This document shows, piece by piece, positions 376-13,678 of a stretch of 13,914 nucleotides of DNA. Each line of letters opens with the position of its first letter. Positions within the stretch are counted from its first letter, which is position 1. The stretch comes from Octopus sinensis (taxonomy: Eukaryota). The stretch spans positions 1 through 13,914 of the forward strand of contig NW_021827680.1 of assembly GCF_006345805.1 (NCBI RefSeq). Direction: 5' to 3'. The translations under genes were made by a program, and so were the position numbers. Below the pieces are notes generated by a model. The model had not been told where the DNA came from. It did no database searches and saw only the letters and a list, made by a program, of their open reading frames with translations.

Positions 376-1266
376 TGTTTCGTCTGCGGCTGCGTTCTGA
401 GTTCAAATTCCGCCGAGGTCGACTTTGCCTTTCATCCTTTCAGCGTTGATTAAATAAGTACCAGTTACGCACGTTGATGTAATCGACATAAACTGTATGT
501 CTGTCCTTGTTTGTCCCCTCTGTGTTTAGCCTCTTGTGGGTAGTAAAGGAACATATACGTTCTGAGTTCAAATTACCCCGAGGTCGACTTTTCCTTTCAT
601 CCTTTCGGGGTCGATTAAATAAGTACCAGTTACGCACTGGGGCCGATATAATCGACTTAAACTGTATGTTTGTCCTTGTTTGTCCCCTCTGTGTTTAGCC
701 CCTTGTGGGTAGTAAAGAAATAGGTATTTCGTCTGCCGTTACATTCTGAGTTCAAATTCCGCCGAGGTCGACTTTGCCTTTCATCCTTTTGGGGTTGATT
801 AAATAAGTACCAGTTACGTACTGGGTCTGATATAATCGACTTAATCCCTTTGTCTGTCCTTGTTTGTCCCCTCTGTGTTTAGCCCCTTGTGGGTAGTAAA
901 GAAATATATATTTTGTCTGTCGTTACGTTCTGAGTTCAAATTTCGCCAAGGTCGACTTTGCCTTTTATCCTTTCGGGGTCGATTAAATAAGTACCAGTTA
1001 CGCACTGGGGCTGATATAATCGACTTAATCTGTTTGTCCCCTCTGTGTTTAGCTCCTTGTGGGTAGTAAAGAAATAGGTATTTTGTTTGTCGCTACGCTC
1101 TGAATTCAAATTCCGCCGAGGTCGACTTTGCCTTTCATCCTTTCAGGGTCGATTAAATAAGTACCAGTTACGCACTGGGGCTGATATAATCGACTTAATC
1201 CATTTGCCTGTCCTTGTTTGTCCCCTCTGTGTTTAGCCCCTTGTGGGTAGTAAAGAAATAAGTATT
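376..1266 (+). mobile_element. Tandem array of 5 head-truncated tRNA-derived SINE units (Meta-domain-like body), period 165-184 bp
   Basis: Anchor ttctgagttcaaatt (B-box-like GAGTTCAAATTCC) at 395, 560, 744, 928 and 1098. Each is followed by gtcgactttgcctttcatcctttcggggtcgattaaataagtaccag, which resembles the MetaSINE central domain as I recall it. Units end at gtagtaaagaaata. No A box in any unit. Confidence 0.85.
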
Positions 1267-1590: not shown

Positions 1591-1678
1591 AGAAACAATA
1601 GAAAGTGAAAGTGAAACTAAAGGAGGTGAACATGGTAATTTAGTTTCCTTCTTAAATTCAGAAAAAAACATCTCTAAT

Positions 1679-1841
1679 AGGCGCAGGAGTGGCTGTGTGG
1701 TAAGTAGCTTGCTAACCAACCACATGGTTCCGGGTTCAGTCCCACTGCGTGGCATCTTGGGCAAGTGTCTTCTGCTATAGCCTCGGGCCGACCAATGCCT
1801 TGTGAGTGGATTTGGTAGACGGAAACTAAACGAAGCCTGTC

Positions 1842-1887
<46 letters not shown>

Positions 1888-2055
1888 AATATAGGCGCAG
1901 GAGTGGCAGTGTGGTAAGTAGCTTGCTTACAACCCACATGGTTCCCGGTTCAGTCTCACTGCGTGGCATCTTGGGCAACTGTCTTCTGCTATAGCCCCGG
2001 GCCGCCCAATGCCTTGTGAGTGGATTTGGTAGACGGAAACTGAAAGAAGCCTGTC

Positions 2056-2116
<61 letters not shown>

Positions 2117-2476
2117 GCGCAGGAGTGACAGTGTGGTAAGTAGCTTGCTACCCAACCACATGGTTCCGGGTTCAGTCTCACTGCGTGGCATCTTGGGCAA
2201 CTGTCTTCTGCTATAGCCCCGGGCCGACCAATGCCTTGTGAGTGGATTTGGTAGACGGAAACTGAAAGAAACTTGTCGTATATATATATATATATTATAT
2301 ATATATATGTTATATATAGGCGCAGGAGTGGCAGTGTGGTAAGTAGCTTGCTTACAAACCATGGTTCCGGGTTCAGTCCCACTGTGTGGCATCTTGGCAA
2401 GTGTCTTTGCTATAGCCCCGGGCCGACCAATGCCTTGTGAGTGGATTTGGTAGACGGAAACTGAAAGAAGCTTGTC

Positions 2477-2515
<39 letters not shown>

Positions 2516-2894
2516 CGCAGGAGTGGCTGTGAGGTTCCGGGTTCAGTCCCACTGCGTGGCACCTTGAGCAAGTGTCTTCTACTATAGCCTAGGTCTGACC
2601 AAAGCCTTGTGAGTGGATTTGGTAGATGGAAACTGAAAGAAGCCCGTCGTATATATGTATATATGTGTGTGTGTGTGTTTCTGTGTCTGTGTTTGTCCCC
2701 CTAGCATTGCTTAACAACCGATGCTGGTGTGTTTATGTCCCTGTTACTTAGCAGTTTCGGCAAAAAGAGAACCGATAGTATAAGTACTGGGCTTACAAAA
2801 AGAATAAGTCCCGCGGTCGATTTGCTCGACTAAAAGGCGGTGCTCCAGCATGGCCGCGGTCAAATGACTGAAACTAGTAAAAGAGTAAAAGAGT
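1679..2894 (+). mobile_element. SINE array 1: five ~164-bp tRNA-SINE 5' halves separated by (TA)n, the last continuing into one 3' tail
   Basis: Units start a(g)gcgcaggagtg at 1679, 1893, 2116, 2318 and 2513, with an A-box-like tggctgtgtggt and a B-box-like ggttcagtccc, and end gaagcc(t/c)gtcg before (TA)n. The tail tttgtcccc...gcggtgctccagcatggccgcggtcaaatgactgaaac...(aagagta)n spans about 2691-2894. Confidence 0.92.
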
Positions 2895-3207
2895 ATGTAT
2901 CCATGATGAAATTTCATTTCTGCTAAAGACCCTGAATAAATAGTGATCTCGTAAGGGATGCTGTTGGATTTTTATAAGTAGTGTAGAATCGTTTTTGTTA
3001 ATATAAACACTGTGTGGTCTATGGAGAAATTCCCCCCTCAGTGAGTGTCTTCATATATCTCAAGCCCAAGTTATGGATATTGTAACCGTATCTGCTGGTT
3101 TGGTGATATGCCGAATTGACAAAACTGGATAAATAGGATTGTGTTGAATGCAAAGTTTGGCAAAATTTTGATAAATTTTTCTCCTTTCTTCATCAAGTTA
3201 CGACCAA

Positions 3208-3546
3208 AGACGTAGGAGTGGCTGTGTGGTAAGTAGCTTGTTTACCAACCATATGGTTCCGGGTTCAGTCCCACTGCGTGGCACCTTGGGTGAGTGTCTT
3301 CTACTATAGCCTCGGGCCGACCAAAGCATTGTGAGTGGATTTGGTAGACAGAAACTGAAAGAAACCCGACGTATATATATGTATAGGCGAAGGAGGGGTT
3401 GTGTGGTAAGTAGTTTGCTTACCAACCACATGGTTCCGGGTTCAGTCCCACTGCGTGGAACCTTGGGCAAGTGTCTTCTACTATAGCCTCGGCCGACCAA
3501 AGCCTTGTGAGTGGATTTGGTAGACGGAAACCGAAAGAAGCCTGTC

Positions 3547-3597
<51 letters not shown>

Positions 3598-3757
3598 AGG
3601 TGTGGTAAGTAGCTTGTTTACCAACCATATGGTTCCGGGTTCAGTCCCACTGCGTGGCACCTTGGGTAAGTGTCTTCTACTATAGCCTCGGCCGACCAAT
3701 GCCTTGTGATGGATTTGTAGACGGAACTGAAAGAATCCTGTCGTATATATATAGTTT

Positions 3758-3789
<32 letters not shown>

Positions 3790-3952
3790 GGCCAGGAGTG
3801 ACTGTGTGGTAAGTAGCTTGCTTACCAACCACATGGTTCCGGGTTCAGTCCCACTGCGTGGCATCTTGGCAAGTGTCTTCTCCTATAGACTCGGGCCGAC
3901 CAAAGCCTTGTGAGTGGATTTGGTAGACGGAAACTGAAAGAAGCCTGTCGTA

Positions 3953-4028
<76 letters not shown>

Positions 4029-4827
4029 ATATATATATATATTATATATATATAATATATATATATATATTTGTATATATATAGGCGCAGGAGTGGCTGT
4101 GTGGTAAGTAGCTTGTTTACCAACCATATGGTTTCCGGGTTCAGTCACTGCGTGGCACCTTGGGTAATGGTCTCTACTATAGCCTCGGCCGACCAAAGCC
4201 TTGTGAGTGGATTTGGTAGACGGAAACAGAAAGAAGCCTGTCGTATATATATATATATATACAAATATATATATGAATAGGCGCAGGATTGGCTGTGTGG
4301 TAAGTAGCTTGCTAACCAACCATGTTGTTCTGGATTGAGTCCCACTGCGTAGCACCTTGGGTAAGTGTCTTCTGCTATAGCCTTGGGACGACCAAACCCT
4401 TGTGAGTGGATTTGGTAGAGGGAAACTGAAAGAAGCCCATCGTATATATATACATATATATAGGCGTAGGGGTGGCTGTGTGCTAAGTAGCTTTCTAACC
4501 AACCACATGGTTCCGGGTTCAGTCCCACTGCGTGGCATTTGGGTAGTTGTCTTCTACTATAGACTCGGGCTGACCATTGCCTTGTGAGTGGATTAGTTAG
4601 ACGGAAACTGAAAGAAGCCTGTCGTATATATACATTTAGGTGCAGGAGTGGCTGTGTGGTAAGTAGCTTGCTAACCAACCACATGGTTCCGGGTTCAGTC
4701 CCACTGCGTGACACTTTAGGTAAGTGTCTGGGTAGTTGTCTCCTACTATAGACTCGGGCCGACCAAAGCCTTGTGAGTGTATTTGGTAGACGGAAACTGA
4801 AAGAAGCCTCTCGTATATATGTATATA

Positions 4828-4879
<52 letters not shown>

Positions 4880-5087: not shown

Positions 5088-5636
5088 AGCGAGAAAGAGC
5101 AACAAGAATGGATAGGTTTTTAGTACGATCGTTTCATACAAGGACAGGTTTATTAAAAGTTGCAAAGATACAGCATATAAACGAGTCCCGTACTCATCAG
5201 CTAAAATACATGTAAGTTCTCTAGACATCCTAGTGTTTGAGGCTATACTCATGAAGTAATGTAGATAATTAACAGATTTCTAAAGTTCATTAAAGTTCTT
5301 TAAAGATGATGCATAGTCTTATCACAGAATTTTAAAAGGTTTGGTAGCATCACAGAGAAGGTGACCTAATCATATGAATTTCCATAGATATGATGAGGGA
5401 TTATATACTCACAGAAGACCAATTTATCCATTGTTTAAAAATCTGTTTAATTATCTACATTACTTCATTAGCCTAAACAGTATAAAACACTATGATGTCT
5501 AAGAGAACTTACATGTATTTTAGCTGATGAGTACGGACTCGTTTATATTCTGTATCTTTGCAACTTTTAATAAAACCTGTCCTTGTATGAAACGATCGTA
5601 CTAAAACCTATCCATTCTTGTTGCTTCTTTCTCGCG
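5088..5636. mobile_element. MITE/foldback element, ~550 bp, with ~200-bp terminal inverted repeats and TA flanks (Tc1/mariner-type target inferred)
   Basis: Left arm gcgagaaagagcaacaagaatggataggtttttagtacgatcgtttcatacaaggacagg... (to ~5284) is the reverse complement of the right arm ~5434-5636 ending ...cctatccattcttgttgcttctttctcgc. TA at 5086-5087 and 5637-5638. Confidence 0.88.
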
Positions 5637-5678: not shown

Positions 5679-6062
5679 TTAGCAGTATCGCCCGGCGTTG
5701 CTCGGTTTGAAGGGAAATAACATATAAGCATTTTTAGAGAGTTATAGCAAAAACATAGCAAAAATGCATTAAAAATGGAATAAAAAATGATGGTAATTTT
5801 TTTTTAAATCGTTGACTCATCGTAGACATTTTTAGAGAGTTACTTCCCCCATATAATAGCGAAAAAATGCATGAAAATAAAAAAATGATGATAATTATTT
5901 TTAAAATCGTAGACTCATTGTAGACGCGTGCTAATACCACAGACGGCTCGATATGAATACCGACTATAAGATCCCGCTTTGGTTAAACTGCACCGCAAAA
6001 TGTGGAATAGTTAGGATCTAAATCGTTGGAGACAACACACAACTTGACTTCTATATATAAGA
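5679..6062 (-). mobile_element. Non-autonomous Helitron, copy A (384 bp)
   Basis: On the minus strand it begins TC(ttatatataga) and ends with the GC hairpin ccgagcaacgccggg plus cgatactgCTAA followed by T. Internal ~98-bp subrepeats at 5729-5827 and 5828-5925. Confidence 0.85.
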
Positions 6063-6724
6063 CTAGCAGTATCGCCCGGCGTTGCTCAGTTTGTAAGGAA
6101 TAACTATATAAGCATTTTAGAGAGTTATAGCAAAAAATAGCTAAAAATGCATTAAAAATGGAATAAAAAATGATGGTAATTTTTTTTTAAATCGTTGACT
6201 CATCGTAGACATTTTTAGAGAGTTACTTCCTTATAATAGCGAAAAAATGCATGAAAATGGAAAAAATGATGGTAAATTTATTTTAAAATCTCGTAGACTC
6301 ATCGTAGACGCTTTCTTAGCCATTTCTGTTTTGGTGTCTTCAAGCCATGAAGTCGTTGTTCTAAAAGACGCTGGTCGCCTTGACAACGCATTACGACGTT
6401 GATTTCCTTACCTCCCTTCCCCCAGCTTCACGAGGGAGGGAAGAAGGGGGAGAAGCAATCAGGTGCAGGTGTGACCATGGACGCCAACTCCGCCGCCATC
6501 GACACACGAAAAATTATGCATTAAAATGGAATAAAAAATGATGTTAAATTATTTTAAATCGTAGACTCATCGTAGACGCGCGCTAATAGCCAGACGGGCT
6601 CGATATGAATCACGACTATAAGATACCCTAATTTTGGTTAACTGCACCGCAAAATGTGGGAGTAGTTAGGAATCTAAATCGAAGGGGACAGACACTCACA
6701 CAACTACAGTTTTATATATATAGA
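6063..6724 (-). mobile_element. Non-autonomous Helitron, copy B (662 bp), same family as A with an extra ~200-bp segment
   Basis: Minus strand reads A|TCtatatatataaaactgtag...gagcaacgccgggcgatactgCTAG, abutting copy A. The A|TC ... CTAA|T boundaries of the pair fit the Helitron AT target. Confidence 0.88.
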
Positions 6725-6726
6725 TA

Positions 6727-6934
6727 TAGACAATTATGTGAGTATAATTTGCATATTATGTTGAAAAAGAAACAATTGTACCACATTAATCCACTTTTTA
6801 GTTGTATTTCACTTTCATTACGTCGAGGGTAGTGCTATTTCTATGTGGAGGTATCATCGGCGATTATACCGGAGGAGCTATTTCTAGCACTAGAGTTAAC
6901 CTATTTAACGTTAACTCTCTTATATTTACGGATA
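6727..6934. repeat. ~205-bp palindrome-rich direct repeat, copy 1 (copy 2 at 7691-7895)
   Basis: tagacaattatgtgagtataatttgcatattatg...ccggaggagctatttctagcactagagttaacctatttaacgttaactctcttatattt recurs 964 bp downstream. Confidence 0.9.
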
Positions 6935-6992
6935 AATATGTATTGTCTCCCTGGTTTATTGTTCTAGGTCGCTTGGTGTTAAAATAAGGGTA

Positions 6993-7008
6993 TTATTGAA
7001 TTAATATC
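6993..7008 (+). repeat. Target-site duplication, left copy
   Basis: ttattgaattaatatc versus ttattaaattaatatc at 7466-7481 (15/16 identical). Confidence 0.8.
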
Positions 7009-7113
7009 ACGTTGAAAGCACCGGTTCTCGTCTGATCACCGAAGTTAAGCAACGTCGAGCCTAGTCAGTACTTAGATGGGTGACCGCTTGGGAAACCTAG
7101 GTGCAGTAAGCAT
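7004..7113 (+). pseudogene. 5S rRNA retrocopy lacking about the first 10 nt
   Basis: atatcacgttgaaagcaccggttctcgtctgatcaccgaagttaagcaacgtcgagcctagtcagtacttagatgggtgaccgcttgggaaacctaggtgcagtaagcat is 110 nt of typical invertebrate 5S. Box A (agttaagcaacgtcg) and box C (tagatgggtgaccgc) are present. The 5' strand of helix I and the oligo-T terminator are missing. Confidence 0.92.
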
Positions 7114-7465
7114 AGCACATTGTGTGAAGGCACATGGCTCAGTGGTTAGAGCGTCGAGCTTACGATCGTGAGGTTGTGAGCTCGAATCCCGGAGCGGGCT
7201 GCGTGTTGTGTTCTTGAGCAAGGCACTTTATTTCACGTTGCTCCAGTTCACTCAGCTGTAGAAATGAGTTTCGACGTCTCTGGTGCCAAGCTGTATCGAC
7301 CTTTGTCTTTCCCTTGGATAACACTGGTGGCGTGGAGAGGGGAGGCTGGTATGCATGGGCGACTGCTGGTCTTCCATAAACAACCTTGCCCGGACTTGTG
7401 TCTAGGAAGGTAACTTTCTAGGTGCAATCCCATGGTCATTCATGACCGAAGGGGGTCTTTACCCT
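7114..7465 (+). mobile_element. Full-length tRNA-derived SINE (third family)
   Basis: A box tggctcagtggtt at 7135-7147 and B-box-like gagctcgaatccc at 7178-7190 (GTTC changed to GCTC). The central tgtgttcttgagcaaggcacttt...ctcagctgtagaaatgagtt resembles V/CORE-type SINE bodies. The 3' hairpin ggtcat-tc-atgacc is followed by the tail gggggtctttaccct. Confidence 0.85.
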
Positions 7466-7481
7466 TTATTAAATTAATATC
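7466..7481 (+). repeat. Target-site duplication, right copy
   Basis: ttattaaattaatatc immediately follows the SINE tail. Confidence 0.8.
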
Positions 7482-7690
7482 TAATTTTTCACCCTCATTT
7501 TTGAATTTATGAATTTGATACGCTGCAGTAAATATTACATGCAGTATTTGCTTCCACTAAGTCTTAGCATTTGCTTTCGGCGGGGAATTTGTAACTACAA
7601 CCCTGAATGTAATCGATCAGACAGCATGGGTAATCGTCGCCCGTGTGGGTCTGATAAATTGCATCGATGACAAATGTTGCTGAAGATTTA

Positions 7691-7895
7691 TAGACAAATA
7701 TGTGAGTATAATTTGCATATTATGTTGATAAAGAAGCAATTGTACATTAATCCACTTTATAGTTGTATTTCACTTTCCTTACGTTGAGGGCAGTGCTATT
7801 TCTATGTAGAGGTATTGTCGACGATTATACCGGAGGAGCTATTTCTAGCACTAGAGTTAACCTATTTAACGTTAACTCTCTTATATTTGCAGATA
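7691..7895. repeat. ~205-bp palindrome-rich direct repeat, copy 2
   Basis: Homologous to 6727-6934. Confidence 0.9.
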
Positions 7896-7902
7896 TATAT
7901 AT

Positions 7903-8092
7903 AACCAAAAAATAAGCAACAAGAATGGATCAGTAGTTTAGTACAATTGTTTCATACTATAAACATTTTATTAAAGCTGCAAATATTACAGCAAAATCTT
8001 ACCTGAAGAGTACTTGACATTATATTTGCTGTAATATTTCCAGCTTTAATAAAATGTTTGTAGTATGAAACAATTGTACTAAACTACCGATC
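7903..8092. mobile_element. Short foldback MITE remnant related to 5088-5636
   Basis: Arms ~7928-7995 and ~8025-8092 are near-perfect inverted repeats (gatcagtagtttagtacaattgtttcatac... / ...gtatgaaacaattgtactaaactaccgatc). The left end agcaacaagaatggat matches the TIR of the larger MITE. The right end is cut at the LINE fragment. Confidence 0.8.
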
Positions 8093-8405
8093 TCGGGTCT
8101 TCCTGGGTCTACCTCTTCCACAGGTTCCCTCTACTGCTGGGGTGTGGCACTTTTTCACACAGCTGTCCACATTCATTTGCAATACATTACCATACCAGTG
8201 CAGTAATTTCTCTTGCACACCACATCTGATGCTTTTTAGGTCCAACTTTTCTCTCAAGGACATTACACTCTGTCGTAGGCCACAGGTTATGGTCTCACTT
8301 GGCTTGCCGGGTCTTCTCAAGCACAGCATATCTCCAAAAGTCTTGGCCACTAGTCATTACCTCGGTGAGGCCTAATGTTCGAAGGTCGTTCTTCACCACG
8401 TGATC
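8089..8405 (-). mobile_element. RTE-clade LINE ORF2 C-terminal fragment in two swapped pieces
   Basis: Minus 8274-8090 translates as RQSVMSLREKLDLKSIRCGVQEKLLHWYGNVLQM...VEGTCGRGRPRKTRD, fitting the RTE-type (R)LxWxGHVxR and GRPRKTW motifs. Minus 8405-8295 translates as DHVVKNDLRTLGLTEVMTSGQDFWRYAVLEKTRQAK*, the kind of sequence that follows GRPRKTW in such ORFs. Confidence 0.8.
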
Positions 8406-8577: not shown

Positions 8578-9169
8578 ACTCTTTTACACTTTTACTCTTT
8601 TACTTGTTTCAGTCATTTGACTGCGGCCATGCTGGAGCACCGCCTTTTTTTTTTAATCGAGTAATACGACCCCGGGACTTATTCTTTTGTAAGCCCAGTA
8701 CTTATTCTATCGGTCTCTTTTTGCCGAACCGCTAAGTGACGGGGACGTAAACACACCAGCATCGGTTGTCAAGCAATGCTAGGGGGACAAACACACACAC
8801 ACATACACATATATATATACATATATACGACAGGCTTCTTTCAGTTTCCGTCTACCAAATCCACTCGCAAGGCATTGGTGGCCCCGAGGCTATAGCAGAA
8901 GACACTTGCCCAAGGTGCCACGCAGTGGGACTGAACCCGGAACCATGTGGTTGGTAAACAAGCTACTTAACACACAGCCACCCCTGCGCCTATATATATA
9001 TATATACGATGGGCTTCTTTCAGTTTCTGTCTACCAAATCCACTCACAGGGCTTTGGTCGGCCCGAGGCTTTAGTAGAAGACACTTGCCCAAGGTGCCAC
9101 GCAGTGGGACTGAACCCGGAACCATGTGGTTGGTAACAAGCTACTTACCACACAGCCACTCCTACGCCT
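8578..9169 (-). mobile_element. SINE array 3 (inverted): two 5' halves plus one tail
   Basis: Reverse complement of the main SINE, with heads at 9006-9169 and ~8827-8991, a (TA)n spacer, and the tail down to (ctctttta)n at 8578. Confidence 0.92.
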
Positions 9170-9517: not shown

Positions 9518-9530
9518 TAAGTTCCTAGAA

Positions 9531-9595
9531 GTTAAAATTCAAATCGGACCATGTTAACACCAAAAATTATTTACATCAAAAACGTGCTTTTTTTA
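9531..9595 (+). mobile_element. Internal fragment of the plus-strand Helitron family
   Basis: aaaattcaaatcggaccatgttaacaccaaaaattatttacatcaaaaacgtgctttt matches 10443-10500. Confidence 0.8.
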
Positions 9596-9615
9596 CTATA
9601 TATATATATTTTTTA

Positions 9616-10686
9616 CTATATATAAAGCTGAAATTGTATGTGTAAGGCAGGTTTAGTAGCCTTCAACTAACACTATCTCCTCTGAGACCCTGCGGCGCAA
9701 GTTGACCAAAATTGAGAGTATGATAGAAGAAGGCTTGCTCTTCATTCCCTGGAAGGTAAAATTCATATCAGGCTATGTTAACACCAAAAATTATTTACAT
9801 CAAAAACGTGCTTTTTTTCTATGAAAATCCCTATTTTTTACGATTTGTAAAGCTGAAGTTGTCTGTGTGTATGTGGCAGGTTTGGTAGCCTTCAACTAAC
9901 ACTTTCTCCTCCGAGACCCTGCGGCGCAAGTTGACCAAAATTGAGAGTATGATAGAAGGTTTGCTCTTCATTCCCTGGAAGGTAAAATTCATATCAGGCT
10001 ATGTTAACACCAAAAATTATTTACATCAAAAACGTGCTTTTTTTCTATGAAAATCCCTATTTTTTACGATTTATAAAGCTGAAGTTGTCTGTGTGTATGT
10101 GGCAGGTTCGGTAGCCTTCAACTAACACTATCTCCTCCGAGACCCTGCGGCGCAATATGACCAAAATTGAGAGTATGATAGAAGAAGGTTTGCTCTTCAT
10201 TCCCTGGAAGGTAAAATTCATATCAGGCTATGTTAACACCAAAAATTATTTACATCAAAAACGTGCTTTTTTTCTATGAAAATCCCTATTTTTTACGATT
10301 TGTAAAGCTGAAGTTGTCTGTGTGTATGTGGCAGGTTTGGTAGCCTTCAACTAACACTATCTCCTCCGAGACCCTGCGGTACAAGTTGACCAAAATAAAG
10401 GGAATGATAGAAGAAGGCTTGCTCTTCATTCCGTAGTCGATAAAATTCAAATCGGACCATGTTAACACCAAAAATTATTTACATCAAAAACGTTCTTTTT
10501 TTCTATAAAAATCCCTATTTCTTACGATTTTTTGACTGCTGTGTCACCATTTTTCGGTGTATTTCAACCAGAAAAATGTTCACTTAAAGAGAATAACAAA
10601 CTACATAATGCAAAATTTTTACTTTTCAAAAATTCCAATTCTAAAGGGTCGACACAAACCCGAGCAACGCCGGGCGATACTACTAG
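9616..10686 (+). mobile_element. Non-autonomous Helitron whose 5' ~226 bp is repeated 4 times
   Basis: Anchor taaagctga at 9623, 9848, 10074 and 10303. The fourth unit continues to the hairpin cccgagcaacgccggg (10659-10674) and CTAG (10683-10686). Confidence 0.88.
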
Positions 10687-11078
10687 CCTATATATATAAA
10701 GCTGAAATTGTCTGTGTGTGTGACAGGTTTGGTAGCCTTCAACTAACACTATCTCCTCCGAGACCCTGCGGCGCAAGTTGACCAAAATTGAGAGTATGAT
10801 TGAAGAAGGCTTGCTCTTCATTCCGTAGACGATAAAATTCAAAACGGACCATGTTAACACCAAAAATTATTTACATTAAAATCGTGCTTTTTTTCTATGA
10901 AAATCCCGATTTTTTACGATTTTTTGACTGCTGTATCACCATTTTGCGGTGTATTTCAACCAGAAAAATGTTCACTTAAAGAGAATAACAAGCTACATAA
11001 TGCATAATTTTTACTTTTCAAAAATTCCAATTCTAAAGGGTCGAAACAAACCCGAGCAACGCCGGGCGATACTGTTAG
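10687..11078 (+). mobile_element. Complete non-autonomous Helitron (392 bp), head-to-tail with the previous copy
   Basis: Starts cctatatatataaagctg (TC replaced by CC) and ends with the hairpin 11051-11066 plus gatactgTTAG|T (CTAG replaced by TTAG). Confidence 0.85.
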
Positions 11079-11165
11079 TTTTCAATAAAGATGATCTAAC
11101 TATCTCGAGAAAACAAAAACAAACGAATAGAAAAGTAAAAAAAGAAATGGTATGAATAGTCAACC

Positions 11166-11686
11166 GAGTGGCTGTGTGGTAAGTAGTTTGCTTACAAACC
11201 ACATGGTTCCGGGTTCAGTCCCACTGCGTGGCACCTTGGGCAAGTATCTTCTACTATAGCCTCGGGCCGACCAAAGCCTTGTTAGTAGATTTGGTAGACG
11301 GAAACTGAAAGAAGCCCGTCGTATATATGTATATATATATATATATATACATAGGTGCAGGAGTGGCTGTGTGGTAAGTAGCTTGCTAACCAACCACATG
11401 GTTCCGAGTTCAGTCCCACTTCGTGGCATCTTGGGCAAGTGTCTTCTGCTATAGCCCCGGGCTGACCAATGCCTTGTGAGTGGATTTGGTAGACGGAAAC
11501 TGAAAGAAGCCCGTCGTATATATATATAGGCATAGGATATGCTATGTGGTAAGTAGCTTGCTTACCAACCACATGGTTCCGGGTTCAGTCCTACTGCATG
11601 GCAGTTTGGGCAAGTGTCTTCTACTATAGCCTCGGGCCGACCAAAGTTTGGTAGACGGAAACTGAAAGAAGCCCGTCGTATATATG

Positions 11687-11757
<71 letters not shown>

Positions 11758-12673: not shown

Positions 12674-12925
12674 ATGTCTTTGTAGGTGAAAATGGCCGAT
12701 TTCTTGTTTCAGGTAACGTTGAGTCATCAAAACGGGTGACCGACGAAGATCAGAGGTTTAATTATGCAAGGTAACCTTGCGTAAGAAGCATTGTGTTTAG
12801 TGAAAATCCTTCGCTTAAAACACCATTCAAGCATGGTTAGCGCTGAGCGGTGAATCAAAGACATGAAAGAACTTGCAAGGCAGATAGAGCAGAGTTCACG
12901 TTGAACAGTTGATGTTTGAACGATA
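12674..12925. repeat. Duplicated SINE 3' flank, copy 1 (copy 2 at 13679-13889)
   Basis: atgtctttgt(a/c)ggtgaaaatggc...caccattcaagcatggtt...gttgaacagttgatgtttgaacgata occurs twice, each directly after a SINE tail. Confidence 0.9.
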
Positions 12926-13678
12926 AGCTTGCTCACCAACCACATGGTTCCGGGTTCAGTCCCTCTGCGTGGCATCTTATGCAAGTGTCTTCTGCTGTAG
13001 CCTCGGGCCGACCAATGCCTTTTGAGTGGATTTGGTAGACGGAAACTGAAAGAAGCCCGTCGTATATATGTATATATATAGGCGTAGGAATGGCTGTGTG
13101 GTAAGTAGCTTGCTTACCAACCACATGGTTCCGGGTTCAGGCCACTTCGTGGCATCTTGGGCAAGTGTCTTCTGCTATAGCCCCGGGCCAACCAATGCCT
13201 TGTGAGTGGATTTGGTAGACGGAAACTGAAAGAAGCCTGTCGTATATATATAAAGGCATTGGATATGCTTTGTGGTAAGTAGCTTGCTTACCAACCACAT
13301 GGTTCCGGGTTCAGTCCCACTGCGTGGCATCTTGGGCAAGTGTCTTCTACTATAGCCTCGGACCGACCAATGCCTTGTGAGTGGATTTGGTAGACGGAAA
13401 CTGAAAGAAGCCCGTCGTATATATGTATCTATATAAATATATATATATGTGTGTGTGTGCGTGCGTGTGTGTTTGTGTTTGTCCCCCTTGCATTGCTTGA
13501 CAACCGATGCTGGTGTGTTTACGTCCCCGTCACTTAGCGGTTCGGCAAAAAGAGACCGATAGAATAAGTACTGGGCTTACAAAAAGAATAAGTCCCGAGG
13601 TCGAGTTGCTCGACTAAAAAGGCGGTGCTCCAGCATGGCCGCAGTCAAATGACTGAAACAAGTAAAAGAGTAAAAGAG
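12926..13678 (+). mobile_element. SINE array 5: three 5' halves (first truncated) plus a tail
   Basis: Heads at 12926, 13080 and 13254. The tail ends ...aagtaaaagagtaaaagag at 13678. Confidence 0.92.

What the first reader, a model, noticed from the sequence alone, without database searches (positions are those of the whole stretch)
6993..7489. 5S rRNA-tRNA-SINE chimera inserted as one unit inside a 16-bp TSD
Seen: a 15/16-bp duplication encloses both the 5S copy and the SINE. The SINE segment starts directly after the mature 5S 3' end. The 5' junction shares atatc between the target site and the start of the 5S match. The 5S boxes A and C are intact, the SINE B box is mutated, and there is no T4 run until 7485-7489. 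Established: TSDs and 5' microhomology are hallmarks of target-primed reverse transcription; template-switch chimeras (U6-L1 type) and 5S-headed SINEs (SINE3, AmnSINE1) exist in vertebrates. Inference: this is either a one-off RT template switch from SINE RNA to 5S rRNA or a member of a 5S+tRNA composite SINE family, which I do not know from cephalopods. It could still be transcribed by Pol III as one ~480-nt RNA from the 5S promoter.
Basis: partly seen in the sequence, partly recalled or inferred. Interest (0 to 1): 0.8.

Follow-up and report, generated by a model that had tools for sequence, protein, structure and literature searches.

The report
Octopus 5S rRNA–SINE chimeric retrocopy
A copy of 5S ribosomal RNA lacking its first ten bases is fused head-to-tail to a complete short mobile element (SINE) and was pasted into an octopus genome in one step, most likely because the copying enzyme jumped from one RNA to the other; this kind of accident is well known in mammals, but here it is seen in a cephalopod.

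Summary
Window 7004-7111 is 5S rRNA positions 11-118 (Rfam, 91 bits). A 3-4 nt filler (ATAG) follows, then a full-length SINE with a tRNA-like head and a CORE domain (about 7116-7465). A 15/16 direct repeat (6993-7008 and 7466-7481) flanks the whole block, and 0 of 3000 shuffles reach that match. No inner repeat flanks either part alone. No T4 run occurs before 7485.

I fetched ten independent copies of the same SINE family from assemblies of a related cephalopod. They fix the family's 5' end ((CA)CACATTG..) and its 3' end (..GTCTTTACYC). The window SINE is therefore complete at both ends. None of the ten copies has a 5S in front.

Best explanation (about 0.65): one target-primed reverse transcription event. 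The LINE reverse transcriptase copied a whole SINE RNA, added a few bases, jumped to the 3' end of a mature 5S rRNA, and stopped at position 11. The 5' end was joined through an ATATC microhomology. A rare 5S-headed SINE subfamily in this genome is not excluded (about 0.15), because no octopus genome could be searched.

This is a new member of a known kind (U6/L1-type and 5S/L1-type chimeras). Interest is modest.

The parts
6993..7008 (+). Left copy of the target-site duplication, TTATTGAATTAATATC. Its last 5 nt (ATATC, 7004-7008) are also 5S positions 11-15, giving a microhomology at the 5' junction.
   Evidence: Matches 7466-7481 in 15 of 16 positions. 0 of 3000 shuffles reach 15/16.
7004..7111 (+). 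5S rRNA retrocopy covering positions 11-118. The 5' strand of helix I and the terminal U's are missing. Box A is at 7043-7057, IE at 7060-7065 and box C at 7073-7090. No T-run terminator follows.
   Evidence: Rfam RF00001, 91.3 bits; all helices except helix I keep standard pairs. Ungapped register against human 5S. It is the only 5S copy in the window.
7112..7115 (+). Filler ATAG between the 5S 3' end and the SINE 5' end. Its length is uncertain (0-7 nt). It is probably non-templated bases added at the template jump.
   Evidence: It is not part of the 5S. It is not shared with the 5' ends of the other SINE copies, which begin (CA)CACATTG.. or ATTG...
7116..7204 (+). SINE 5' end and tRNA-like head. 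Leader CACATTGTGTGAAGGCACA; box A TGGCTCAGTGG at 7135-7145; B box AGCTCGAATCC at 7179-7189, with a T->C change relative to the family consensus.
   Evidence: Aligned with L001-L010. No tRNA is called by ARAGORN or Rfam.
7205..7266 (+). Central CORE-like domain of the SINE (..CTTGAGCAAGGCACTT..CCAGTTCACTCAGCTGTAGAAATG).
   Evidence: It is the most conserved block among the family copies.
7267..7465 (+). SINE 3' body and tail. It ends in a small hairpin (GGTCATTCATGACC, within 7428-7450) followed by GGGGGTCTTTACCCT. There is no poly(A) or microsatellite tail.
   Evidence: The 3' terminus ..CCATGGTCATTCATGACCGAAGGGGGTCTTTACYC is conserved in L002, L003, L005, L008 and L010. The window copy is 92% identical to the majority consensus of 7 other copies.
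7466..7481 (+). Right copy of the target-site duplication, TTATTAAATTAATATC. It follows the SINE 3' terminus directly.
7485..7489 (+). First run of 4 or more T downstream of the 5S start (TTTTT). It lies in the flank and is a potential Pol III stop for any read-through transcript. A second T5 lies at 7498-7502.
   Evidence: Regex scan of 6950-7560.

Best explanation
The block 7004-7465 is a dead-on-arrival chimeric retrocopy made in one target-primed reverse transcription event.

Proposed sequence of events (all steps are inferred):
1. A LINE-encoded endonuclease/reverse transcriptase nicked the AT-rich target TTATTRAATTAATATC.
2. It primed on the 3' end of a CORE-type SINE RNA (..GTCTTTACCCT) and copied that RNA to its 5' end (CACATTG..).
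3. It added about 3-4 untemplated bases.
4. It jumped end-to-end onto the 3' end of a mature 5S rRNA and copied it back to position 11.
5. The nascent cDNA was then joined to the upstream target end through the 5-nt match ATATC.
6. Staggered cleavage produced the 16-bp duplication.

What is shown directly: the anatomy, the significance of the duplication, the completeness of the SINE at both ends, the 5S end points, and the absence of a 5S in front of ten other family copies.

The product is most likely inert. The 5S cannot fold helix I, so it is not a functional rRNA. Its internal promoter is intact, so a Pol III read-through RNA of about 480 nt ending at T5 7485-7489 is possible but unproven.
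For: - A single 15/16 TSD encloses both parts; 0 of 3000 shuffles reach it.
- No inner TSD exists. The best inner matches are 6-10 of 8-16 positions, which is chance level.
- The right TSD copy abuts the conserved family 3' terminus.
- The SINE 5' end coincides with the family 5' end defined by L001-L010.
- The 5S stops at position 118 of about 120, which is the mature 3' end and not a genomic T-run.
- The 5S and the SINE are in the same orientation, with only ATAG between them.
- The 5' truncation comes with a 5-nt microhomology (read from the sequence).
- Ten independent family copies carry no 5S (cmscan; local alignments).
[quoted passage not shown] It lists 253 candidate human chimeras, 10.5% of them with 5S, and says that U6/L1 chimeras do not propagate further. 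Template switching from a SINE to 5S rRNA is the proposed origin of composite 5S/tRNA heads (PMC4824008, PMC4758252). Double template jumps are described in Magnaporthe (PMC2104539).
Against: - No genome of this species or a close relative could be searched. Uniqueness of the junction and the orthologous empty site are therefore untested.
- The ten comparison copies are 69-77% identical to the window copy and come from another cephalopod (Logan runs SRR11869384-94, species unknown).
- In human 5S/L1 chimeras, PMC11838501 reports the 5S part as frequently antisense to the LINE-1 and cut at positions 46 or 90. Here it is in sense orientation and complete at its 3' end, so the resemblance is closer to the U6/L1 type.
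- The LINE partner was not identified.
- TSDs of the other copies are too decayed to confirm the typical TSD length.
Confidence: 0.65

Rival explanations
1. The insertion is a member of a 5S-headed composite SINE lineage (SINE3/AmnSINE1-like), here 5'-truncated by 10 nt. Such a lineage would be transcribed from the 5S internal promoter and mobilised through the SINE tail. It would be a subfamily of this CORE-SINE family in this octopus genome.
For: - The architecture (5S, then tRNA-like region, then conserved core, then tail) is the one described for AmnSINE1/SINE3 heads (PMC4824008, PMC4758252).
- 5S boxes A, IE and C are intact and no T4 run interrupts the unit.
- The SINE's own B box carries a T->C change, so a 5S promoter could have taken over.
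- The window copy is close to the family consensus (92%), so it is not ancient.
- A random window is more likely to sample a multi-copy family than a rare one-off.
Against: - 0 of 10 independent family copies have a 5S upstream. At 95% confidence this bounds such a subfamily to below about 26% of copies in that species.
- The junction-spanning ORF (7072..7221, minus strand) found no relative among 5.8 billion proteins, whereas the SINE-body ORFs did find relatives. This is a weak test.
- The 5S part is complete to its mature 3' end and keeps all helices except helix I. That looks like a fresh copy of cellular 5S rRNA, not a head that has diverged outside its promoter boxes.
- The papers I read list no 5S-derived SINE from molluscs (Table 2 of PMC10946416; PMC10886601).
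Confidence: 0.15
2. The two RNAs were joined before reverse transcription. This could have happened by RNA ligation, as shown for U6/L1 (RtcB, PMC6789731). It could also have happened by Pol III read-through from a donor locus where this SINE sits just behind a terminator-less 5S copy. The fused RNA was then retrotransposed as one template.
For: It leaves the same genomic footprint: one TSD, same orientation, and the 5S 3' end next to the SINE 5' end. The title and significance statement of PMC6789731 show that ligation can precede retrotransposition of U6/L1 chimeras.
Against: - From general knowledge, RtcB needs a 2',3'-cyclic phosphate, which U6 carries. 5S rRNA is not known to carry one.
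- The ATAG filler is more typical of untemplated addition at a template jump than of a ligation.
- No donor locus is known.
- Sequence alone cannot separate this reading from a template jump.
Confidence: 0.1
3. There were two independent events. Either a SINE inserted exactly at the 3' end of an older 5S pseudogene, or a 5S cDNA was captured at a break exactly at the 5' edge of an older SINE. In the first case the flanking repeat would be fortuitous. In the second it would belong to the SINE alone.
For: SINE-dense regions such as this window have many nested insertions. The repeat is AT-rich.
Against: - 0 of 3000 shuffles reach the 15/16 repeat.
- No TSD flanks the SINE alone or the 5S alone.
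- The junction joins two natural RNA termini within 4 nt, which independent events would hit only by luck.
- The 5S has no tail or TSD of its own.
Confidence: 0.05

Closest known systems
U6/L1-type bipartite chimeric retrocopies of mammals (U6, U3, U5 or 5S rRNA fused to L1 or Alu 3' parts; Buzdin et al. 2003 as cited in PMC4758252 and PMC4824008; catalogue in preprint PMC11838501)
   Same: A small Pol III RNA is fused in sense orientation upstream of a retroelement 3' part. One TSD encloses both. The small RNA ends at its own 3' end at the junction. The products are thought to be one-off and non-propagating.
   Different: - The host is a cephalopod.
- The 3' partner is a complete SINE (an end-to-end jump) rather than a 5'-truncated L1.
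- There is no poly(A) tail, so the enzyme is not L1-like.
- PMC11838501 describes human 5S/L1 chimeras as frequently antisense and cut at positions 46 or 90. Here the 5S is in sense orientation and spans positions 11-118.
5S-headed SINEs with a residual tRNA part: SINE3 (zebrafish), AmnSINE1 and other Deu-SINEs, MEG-TR (fruit bats), HaSE3 (Lepidoptera) (PMC4824008, PMC4758252, PMC10946416, PMC10886601)
   Same: The module order is the same: 5S promoter, then tRNA-like region, then conserved central domain, then LINE-type tail. The proposed origin is the same template switch from a SINE RNA to 5S rRNA.
   Different: Those are multi-copy families whose 5S part has taken over promoter function. 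Here only one copy is known, the 5S lacks its first 10 nt, and the full tRNA-like head is still present. The central domain is CORE-like, not Deu.
Octopus CORE-SINEs OR1/OR2 (Ohshima and Okada 1994, as cited in PMC4758252 and PMC4824008)
   Same: The SINE part has a tRNA-like head plus a CORE-like central domain and occurs in octopus (O. bimaculoides relatives P0001 and P0006).
   Different: Those families are described as tRNA-headed only.
Tripartite and bipartite chimeric pseudogenes of Magnaporthe grisea (PMC2104539)
   Same: Template jumps by a non-L1 LINE reverse transcriptase outside mammals fuse cellular RNA copies to retroelement copies.
   Different: The host is a fungus, and the partner RNAs differ (WEIRD, MINE).

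Membership tests
Template-jump chimeric retrocopy (U6/L1 type) | Two unrelated RNA-derived parts are fused directly, in the same orientation. | tested here: met
   5S positions 11-118 (7004-7111) and the SINE (7116-7465) are both on the + strand and are separated by 4 nt.
Template-jump chimeric retrocopy (U6/L1 type) | One target-site duplication flanks the whole chimera, and neither part has its own. | tested here: met
   The outer repeat is 15/16 and 0 of 3000 shuffles reach it. The best inner repeats are at chance level.
Template-jump chimeric retrocopy (U6/L1 type) | The 5' partner ends at the natural 3' end of the small RNA, and the 3' partner carries the retroelement 3' end used for priming. 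| tested here: met
   The 5S ends at position 118 with no T-run. The SINE ends at the conserved family terminus, which abuts the TSD.
Template-jump chimeric retrocopy (U6/L1 type) | The junction is unique in the genome, i.e. the chimera does not propagate. | tested here: inconclusive
   0 of 10 other family copies carry a 5S, but they come from another cephalopod. This genome could not be searched. Scans of metagenome, prokaryote and viral contigs found nothing.
Template-jump chimeric retrocopy (U6/L1 type) | Both parts are absent together at the orthologous empty site. | not testable with these tools
   No cephalopod genome collection is available. The in-window paralogue (6725-6942 versus 7689-7903) stops short of the insertion site.
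5S-headed SINE family (SINE3 class) | The head is 5S-derived and has box A, IE and box C. | tested here: met
   Boxes lie at 7043-7057, 7060-7065 and 7073-7090 and match the 5S consensus.
5S-headed SINE family (SINE3 class) | Many dispersed copies share the same 5S-body junction, each with its own TSD. | tested here: inconclusive
   Only this copy is known. The 5S and the SINE are each single-copy in the window. No 5S lies next to the 10 related copies. The junction ORF has no relatives. The proper test, a search of the host genome, was not possible.
5S-headed SINE family (SINE3 class) | The element is transcribed by Pol III from the 5S promoter. | not testable with these tools
   The sequence permits it, with no T4 run until 7485. 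No expression or occupancy data are available.
CORE-SINE superfamily (the SINE part) | The head is tRNA-derived and has A and B boxes. | tested here: met
   Box A is TGGCTCAGTGG. The B box is AGCTCGAATCC, one change from the family consensus. tRNA detectors are negative, as is usual for decayed SINE heads.
CORE-SINE superfamily (the SINE part) | A conserved CORE central domain is present. | tested here: inconclusive
   Head plus core align with the MIR consensus, and 0 of 1000 shuffles reach the score.
CORE-SINE superfamily (the SINE part) | The element is a multi-copy dispersed repeat with a defined 3' tail. | tested here: met
   There are 10 independent Logan copies plus two O. bimaculoides protein-level copies. 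The 3' terminus is conserved.
Functional 5S rRNA gene | A full-length RNA of about 120 nt with helix I, followed by a T-run terminator, usually in tandem arrays. | tested here: not met
   Positions 1-10 are missing and helix I is unpaired. No T-run follows the 3' end. There is a single copy in 13.9 kb.

The most novel reading that the evidence does not exclude
This locus could be a member, or the founder, of a 5S-headed CORE-SINE lineage in octopods. That would be the first SINE3-class element reported from Mollusca. It would have arisen by the same SINE-to-5S template jump proposed for vertebrate AmnSINE1/SINE3, caught at a stage where the complete tRNA-like head is still present.
Probability: 0.12. 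Interest if true: 0.6.

Novelty: new member of a known kind. Interest (0 to 1): 0.3.

Why it matters
The locus shows the step that is thought to create composite SINE promoters: a reverse transcriptase jumps from the 5' end of a SINE RNA onto 5S rRNA. Both natural RNA termini are still visible, a small filler sits between them, and the 5' junction is mediated by microhomology.

It shows that a non-L1 LINE enzyme in a cephalopod makes the same kind of chimera that L1 makes in mammals. The insertion has no poly(A) tail, and the SINE has a specific hairpin-bearing 3' end.

If further copies exist, this would extend 5S-headed SINEs to molluscs. As a single insertion it has no evident consequence for the host. 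It also supplies a defined 5' and 3' terminus for a cephalopod CORE-type SINE family.

Tried and rejected
1. A paralogous empty site inside the window. The local duplication 6725-6942 versus 7689-7903 (92%) ends about 50 bp before the insertion site, so it is not usable.

2. Exact-pattern scans of public DNA collections. I searched for a 5S box C to tRNA box A composite and for a conserved SINE 23-mer. Metagenome contigs, prokaryote genomes and viral contigs gave no hits. None of these collections appears to hold cephalopod DNA.

3. Protein-level searches used as a proxy.
   - The junction-spanning antisense ORF (7072..7221) had no relatives.
   - The sense frame 7180-7410 had none.
   - The antisense body ORF gave one O. 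bimaculoides protein, whose DNA is not on record.
   - P0006 is also not on record.

4. The idea that the 17-nt 'linker' 7112-7129 is a second, degenerate 5S 5' end. The local alignment score was reached by about 10-20% of shuffles, so I rejected it. Most of the linker turned out to be the SINE's own leader.

5. The idea that L001 carries a remnant of the 5S 3' end upstream of its SINE. The best match is a 9-mer, reached by 239 of 3000 shuffles, so I rejected it.

6. TSDs of the other SINE copies. They are too decayed to call.

7. The species behind runs SRR11869384-94. A literature search for the accession prefix hit only an unrelated paper.

8. Pfam on the neighbouring ORFs at 8087-8372 gave no hits.

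9. One literature search (5S-Deu-L2 together with cephalopod terms) returned nothing relevant. Albertin et al. 2015 is not held in the library.

Full report
**What is in the sequence**

The window is AT-rich and packed with SINEs. Protein-level matches to Octopus bimaculoides show that it comes from an octopus.

Rfam finds exactly one RNA family in the 13.9 kb: 5S rRNA at 6994-7109 on the + strand, 91.3 bits. Reading the alignment, the first ten model positions are matched by unrelated flank and helix I is unpaired. True homology runs from 7004 (ATATCACGTTGAAAGC.., 5S position 11) to 7111 (..GGTGCAGTAAGC, position 118).

This places box A at 7043-7057, the intermediate element at 7060-7065 and box C at 7073-7090. 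All three match the consensus. Every helix other than helix I keeps standard pairs, including the CCUAG/CUAGG helix. The copy therefore looks like a little-changed copy of a working 5S rRNA. No T-run follows it.

**The SINE part**

From 7112 onward the sequence has a tRNA-like box A (TGGCTCAGTGG, 7135-7145) and a B box (AGCTCGAATCC, 7179-7189). Neither ARAGORN nor the Rfam tRNA model calls a tRNA. Neither the 5S nor this SINE recurs in the window.

**Finding other copies**

No tool searches cephalopod genomes. Exact-pattern scans of metagenome, prokaryote and viral contigs were empty. I therefore used spurious ORFs that run antisense through the SINE as handles.
- One ORF hit an O. bimaculoides 'uncharacterized protein'.
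- A full HMMER scan with the 85-aa open stretch 7163-7417 (minus strand) returned 16 SINE-derived ORFs. Most come from Logan assemblies of runs SRR11869384-94.
- Fetching their contigs gave ten independent copies of the family: L001, L002, L003, L004, L005 (same as L006 and L007), L008 (same as L009), L010, L011 (same as L012), L013 (same as L014) and L015.

The copies are 69-77% identical to the window copy. The window copy is 92% identical to their majority consensus, so it is a comparatively well-preserved member of an old family.

Head plus central domain align with the mammalian MIR consensus, and 0 of 1000 shuffles reach the score. It points to a CORE-SINE. The octopus SINEs OR1 and OR2 are published CORE-SINEs (PMC4758252, PMC4824008). 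I could not compare sequences with them.

**The ends of the SINE**

The other copies define the family's 3' terminus as ..CCATGGTCATTCATGACCGAAGGGGGTCTTTACYC. In the window this terminus ends at 7464/7465 and is followed at once by the right repeat copy.

At the 5' end, four of the eight aligned sequences (the window, L002, L004 and L010) share (CA)CACAT.., and others begin at ATTG... The window SINE therefore starts at about 7116, and most of what looked like a 17-nt 'linker' is the SINE's own leader. Only ATAG (7112-7115; the range of uncertainty is 0-7 nt) is left unexplained between the 5S 3' end and the SINE 5' end.

An apparent resemblance of the linker to the 5S 5' region is at chance level.

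**The flanking repeat**

TTATTGAATTAATATC (6993-7008) and TTATTAAATTAATATC (7466-7481) match in 15 of 16 positions. None of 3000 shuffles of the two junction zones reaches 15/16. No comparable repeat flanks the SINE alone or the 5S alone.

The last five bases of the left copy, ATATC, are also 5S positions 11-15. The 5' junction therefore lies within a 5-nt microhomology. The first T4 run on the + strand is at 7485-7489, in the flank.

**Interpretation**

Two natural RNA termini are joined within four bases: the mature 5S 3' end without its U's, and the SINE's 5' end. The two parts are in the same orientation. One duplication encloses them, and its right copy abuts the SINE's priming end. This is the footprint of a single target-primed reverse transcription event in which the enzyme finished the SINE RNA, added a few bases and jumped onto a 5S rRNA.

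The event stopped ten nucleotides before the 5S 5' end, and the cDNA was joined to the target through ATATC. 5' truncation with microhomology is a known feature of such insertions (general knowledge).

The same mechanism is documented or proposed in several places:
- for U6/L1 and 5S/L1 chimeras in mammals (253 candidates, 10.5% with 5S, in the preprint PMC11838501);
- for fungal chimeras (PMC2104539);
- as the origin of composite 5S/tRNA SINE heads (PMC4824008, PMC4758252).

The absence of a poly(A) tail and the conserved hairpin-bearing 3' end suggest a partner LINE that recognises a specific 3' end, not an L1-type enzyme. This is an inference, and the partner was not identified.

**One-off or family?**

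None of the ten other copies has a 5S in front. This holds for cmscan at gathering threshold (L001-L010) and at E up to 0.01 (L011, L013 and L015). It also holds for local alignments of the upstream flanks of six copies against the 5S. The ordinary form of the family is therefore tRNA-headed.

This favours a one-off event, as does the near-canonical state of the 5S part. The test is imperfect. The copies come from another cephalopod. Ten copies only bound a 5S-headed subfamily to below about a quarter of copies. The junction-ORF search is insensitive.

The papers I read list 5S-derived SINEs from fish, mammals and Lepidoptera, and none from molluscs (PMC10946416, PMC10886601).

My probabilities are:
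- about 0.65 for a one-off template jump;
- about 0.15 for a 5S-headed subfamily;
- about 0.10 for fusion at the RNA level before reverse transcription (ligation as for U6/L1, PMC6789731, or read-through from a donor locus), which sequence alone cannot separate;
- about 0.05 for two independent events.

**Function**

The 5S cannot form helix I, so it is not a working rRNA gene. Its internal promoter is intact, the SINE's B box carries a T->C change relative to the family, and no terminator intervenes. Nothing here tests it, and the native upstream context of a 5S gene is missing. The most likely status is an inert insertion.

**Verdict**

This is a new member of a known kind, not a new mechanism. 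Its interest is as a clean invertebrate example of the step that generates 5S-headed SINEs. It would rise if a genome search showed further copies with the same junction.

Noticed in passing
window 1629-4850, 11108-11700, 12849-13450 (+ strand); 8787-9136 (inverted): Dense, partly tandem arrays of another tRNA-like SINE (GGCGCAGGAGTGGCTGTGTGGTAAGTAGCTTGCTTACC..GGTTCCGGGTTCAGTCCC..). Each unit ends in a (TA)n microsatellite. About 18-20 copies at 175-222 bp spacing fill roughly a third of the window.
   Followed up: no
window 6725-6942 and 7689-7903: A direct duplication of about 215 bp (92% identity) brackets the insertion locus. The second copy is interrupted at about 7903 by a palindromic element, so it gives no paralogous empty site.
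   Followed up: partly
window ~5095-5625 and ~7905-8095: Two MITE-like elements with long terminal inverted repeats (..aagcaacaagaatggat..gtttcata..). The first is about 530 bp long. Seen only by reading the sequence.
   Followed up: no
window 8084-8350 (minus strand): An 88-aa ORF ends in ..LLHWYGNVLQMN..GTCGRGRPRKTRDR. From memory this resembles the C-terminal motif of RTE/BovB-type LINE proteins. Pfam gave no hit, and no similarity to the SINE tail was found.
   Followed up: partly
window 9524-11073: A tandem repeat with a 229-bp unit (4.4 copies, 92% matches) merges into a 392-bp periodicity. Its nature is unknown.
   Followed up: no
window 556-1266: A 184-bp tandem array (3.9 copies) of a third SINE-like unit containing ..GTTCAAATTCCGCCGAGGTCGACTTTGCCTTTCATCC...
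   Followed up: no
window ~5680-5960, ~6065-6320, ~6500-6700: A repeated module occurs three times..tagcagtatcgcccggcgttgctc.. followed by aatcgtagactcatcgtagac... The 99-bp internal repeat at 6115-6309 belongs to it.
   Followed up: no
L003 (minus strand) 646-673, upstream of the main SINE copy at 275-581: A second, partial SINE head (ATTGAAGGCACCTGGCTCAGAGGTTAGGGC..) sits about 65 bp upstream of a full copy. It may be a head duplication or a truncated tandem insertion.
   Followed up: no
protein P0006 = UniRef100_A0A0L8GZK7 (O. bimaculoides, 'RRM domain-containing protein'), residues 170-202: The C-terminal 33 residues of this annotated protein are the antisense translation of this SINE's core and head (85% identity to the window frame). 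This is either an exonised SINE or an annotation artefact.
   Followed up: no
L001, L004-L007, L010-L014: For these loci look-up of encoding contigs reports 'translates_to_query: no'. For L013 I checked this directly: the recorded 230-aa gene at 1-690 contains stops in the delivered sequence. The stored contig and the gene call therefore differ slightly.
   Followed up: partly
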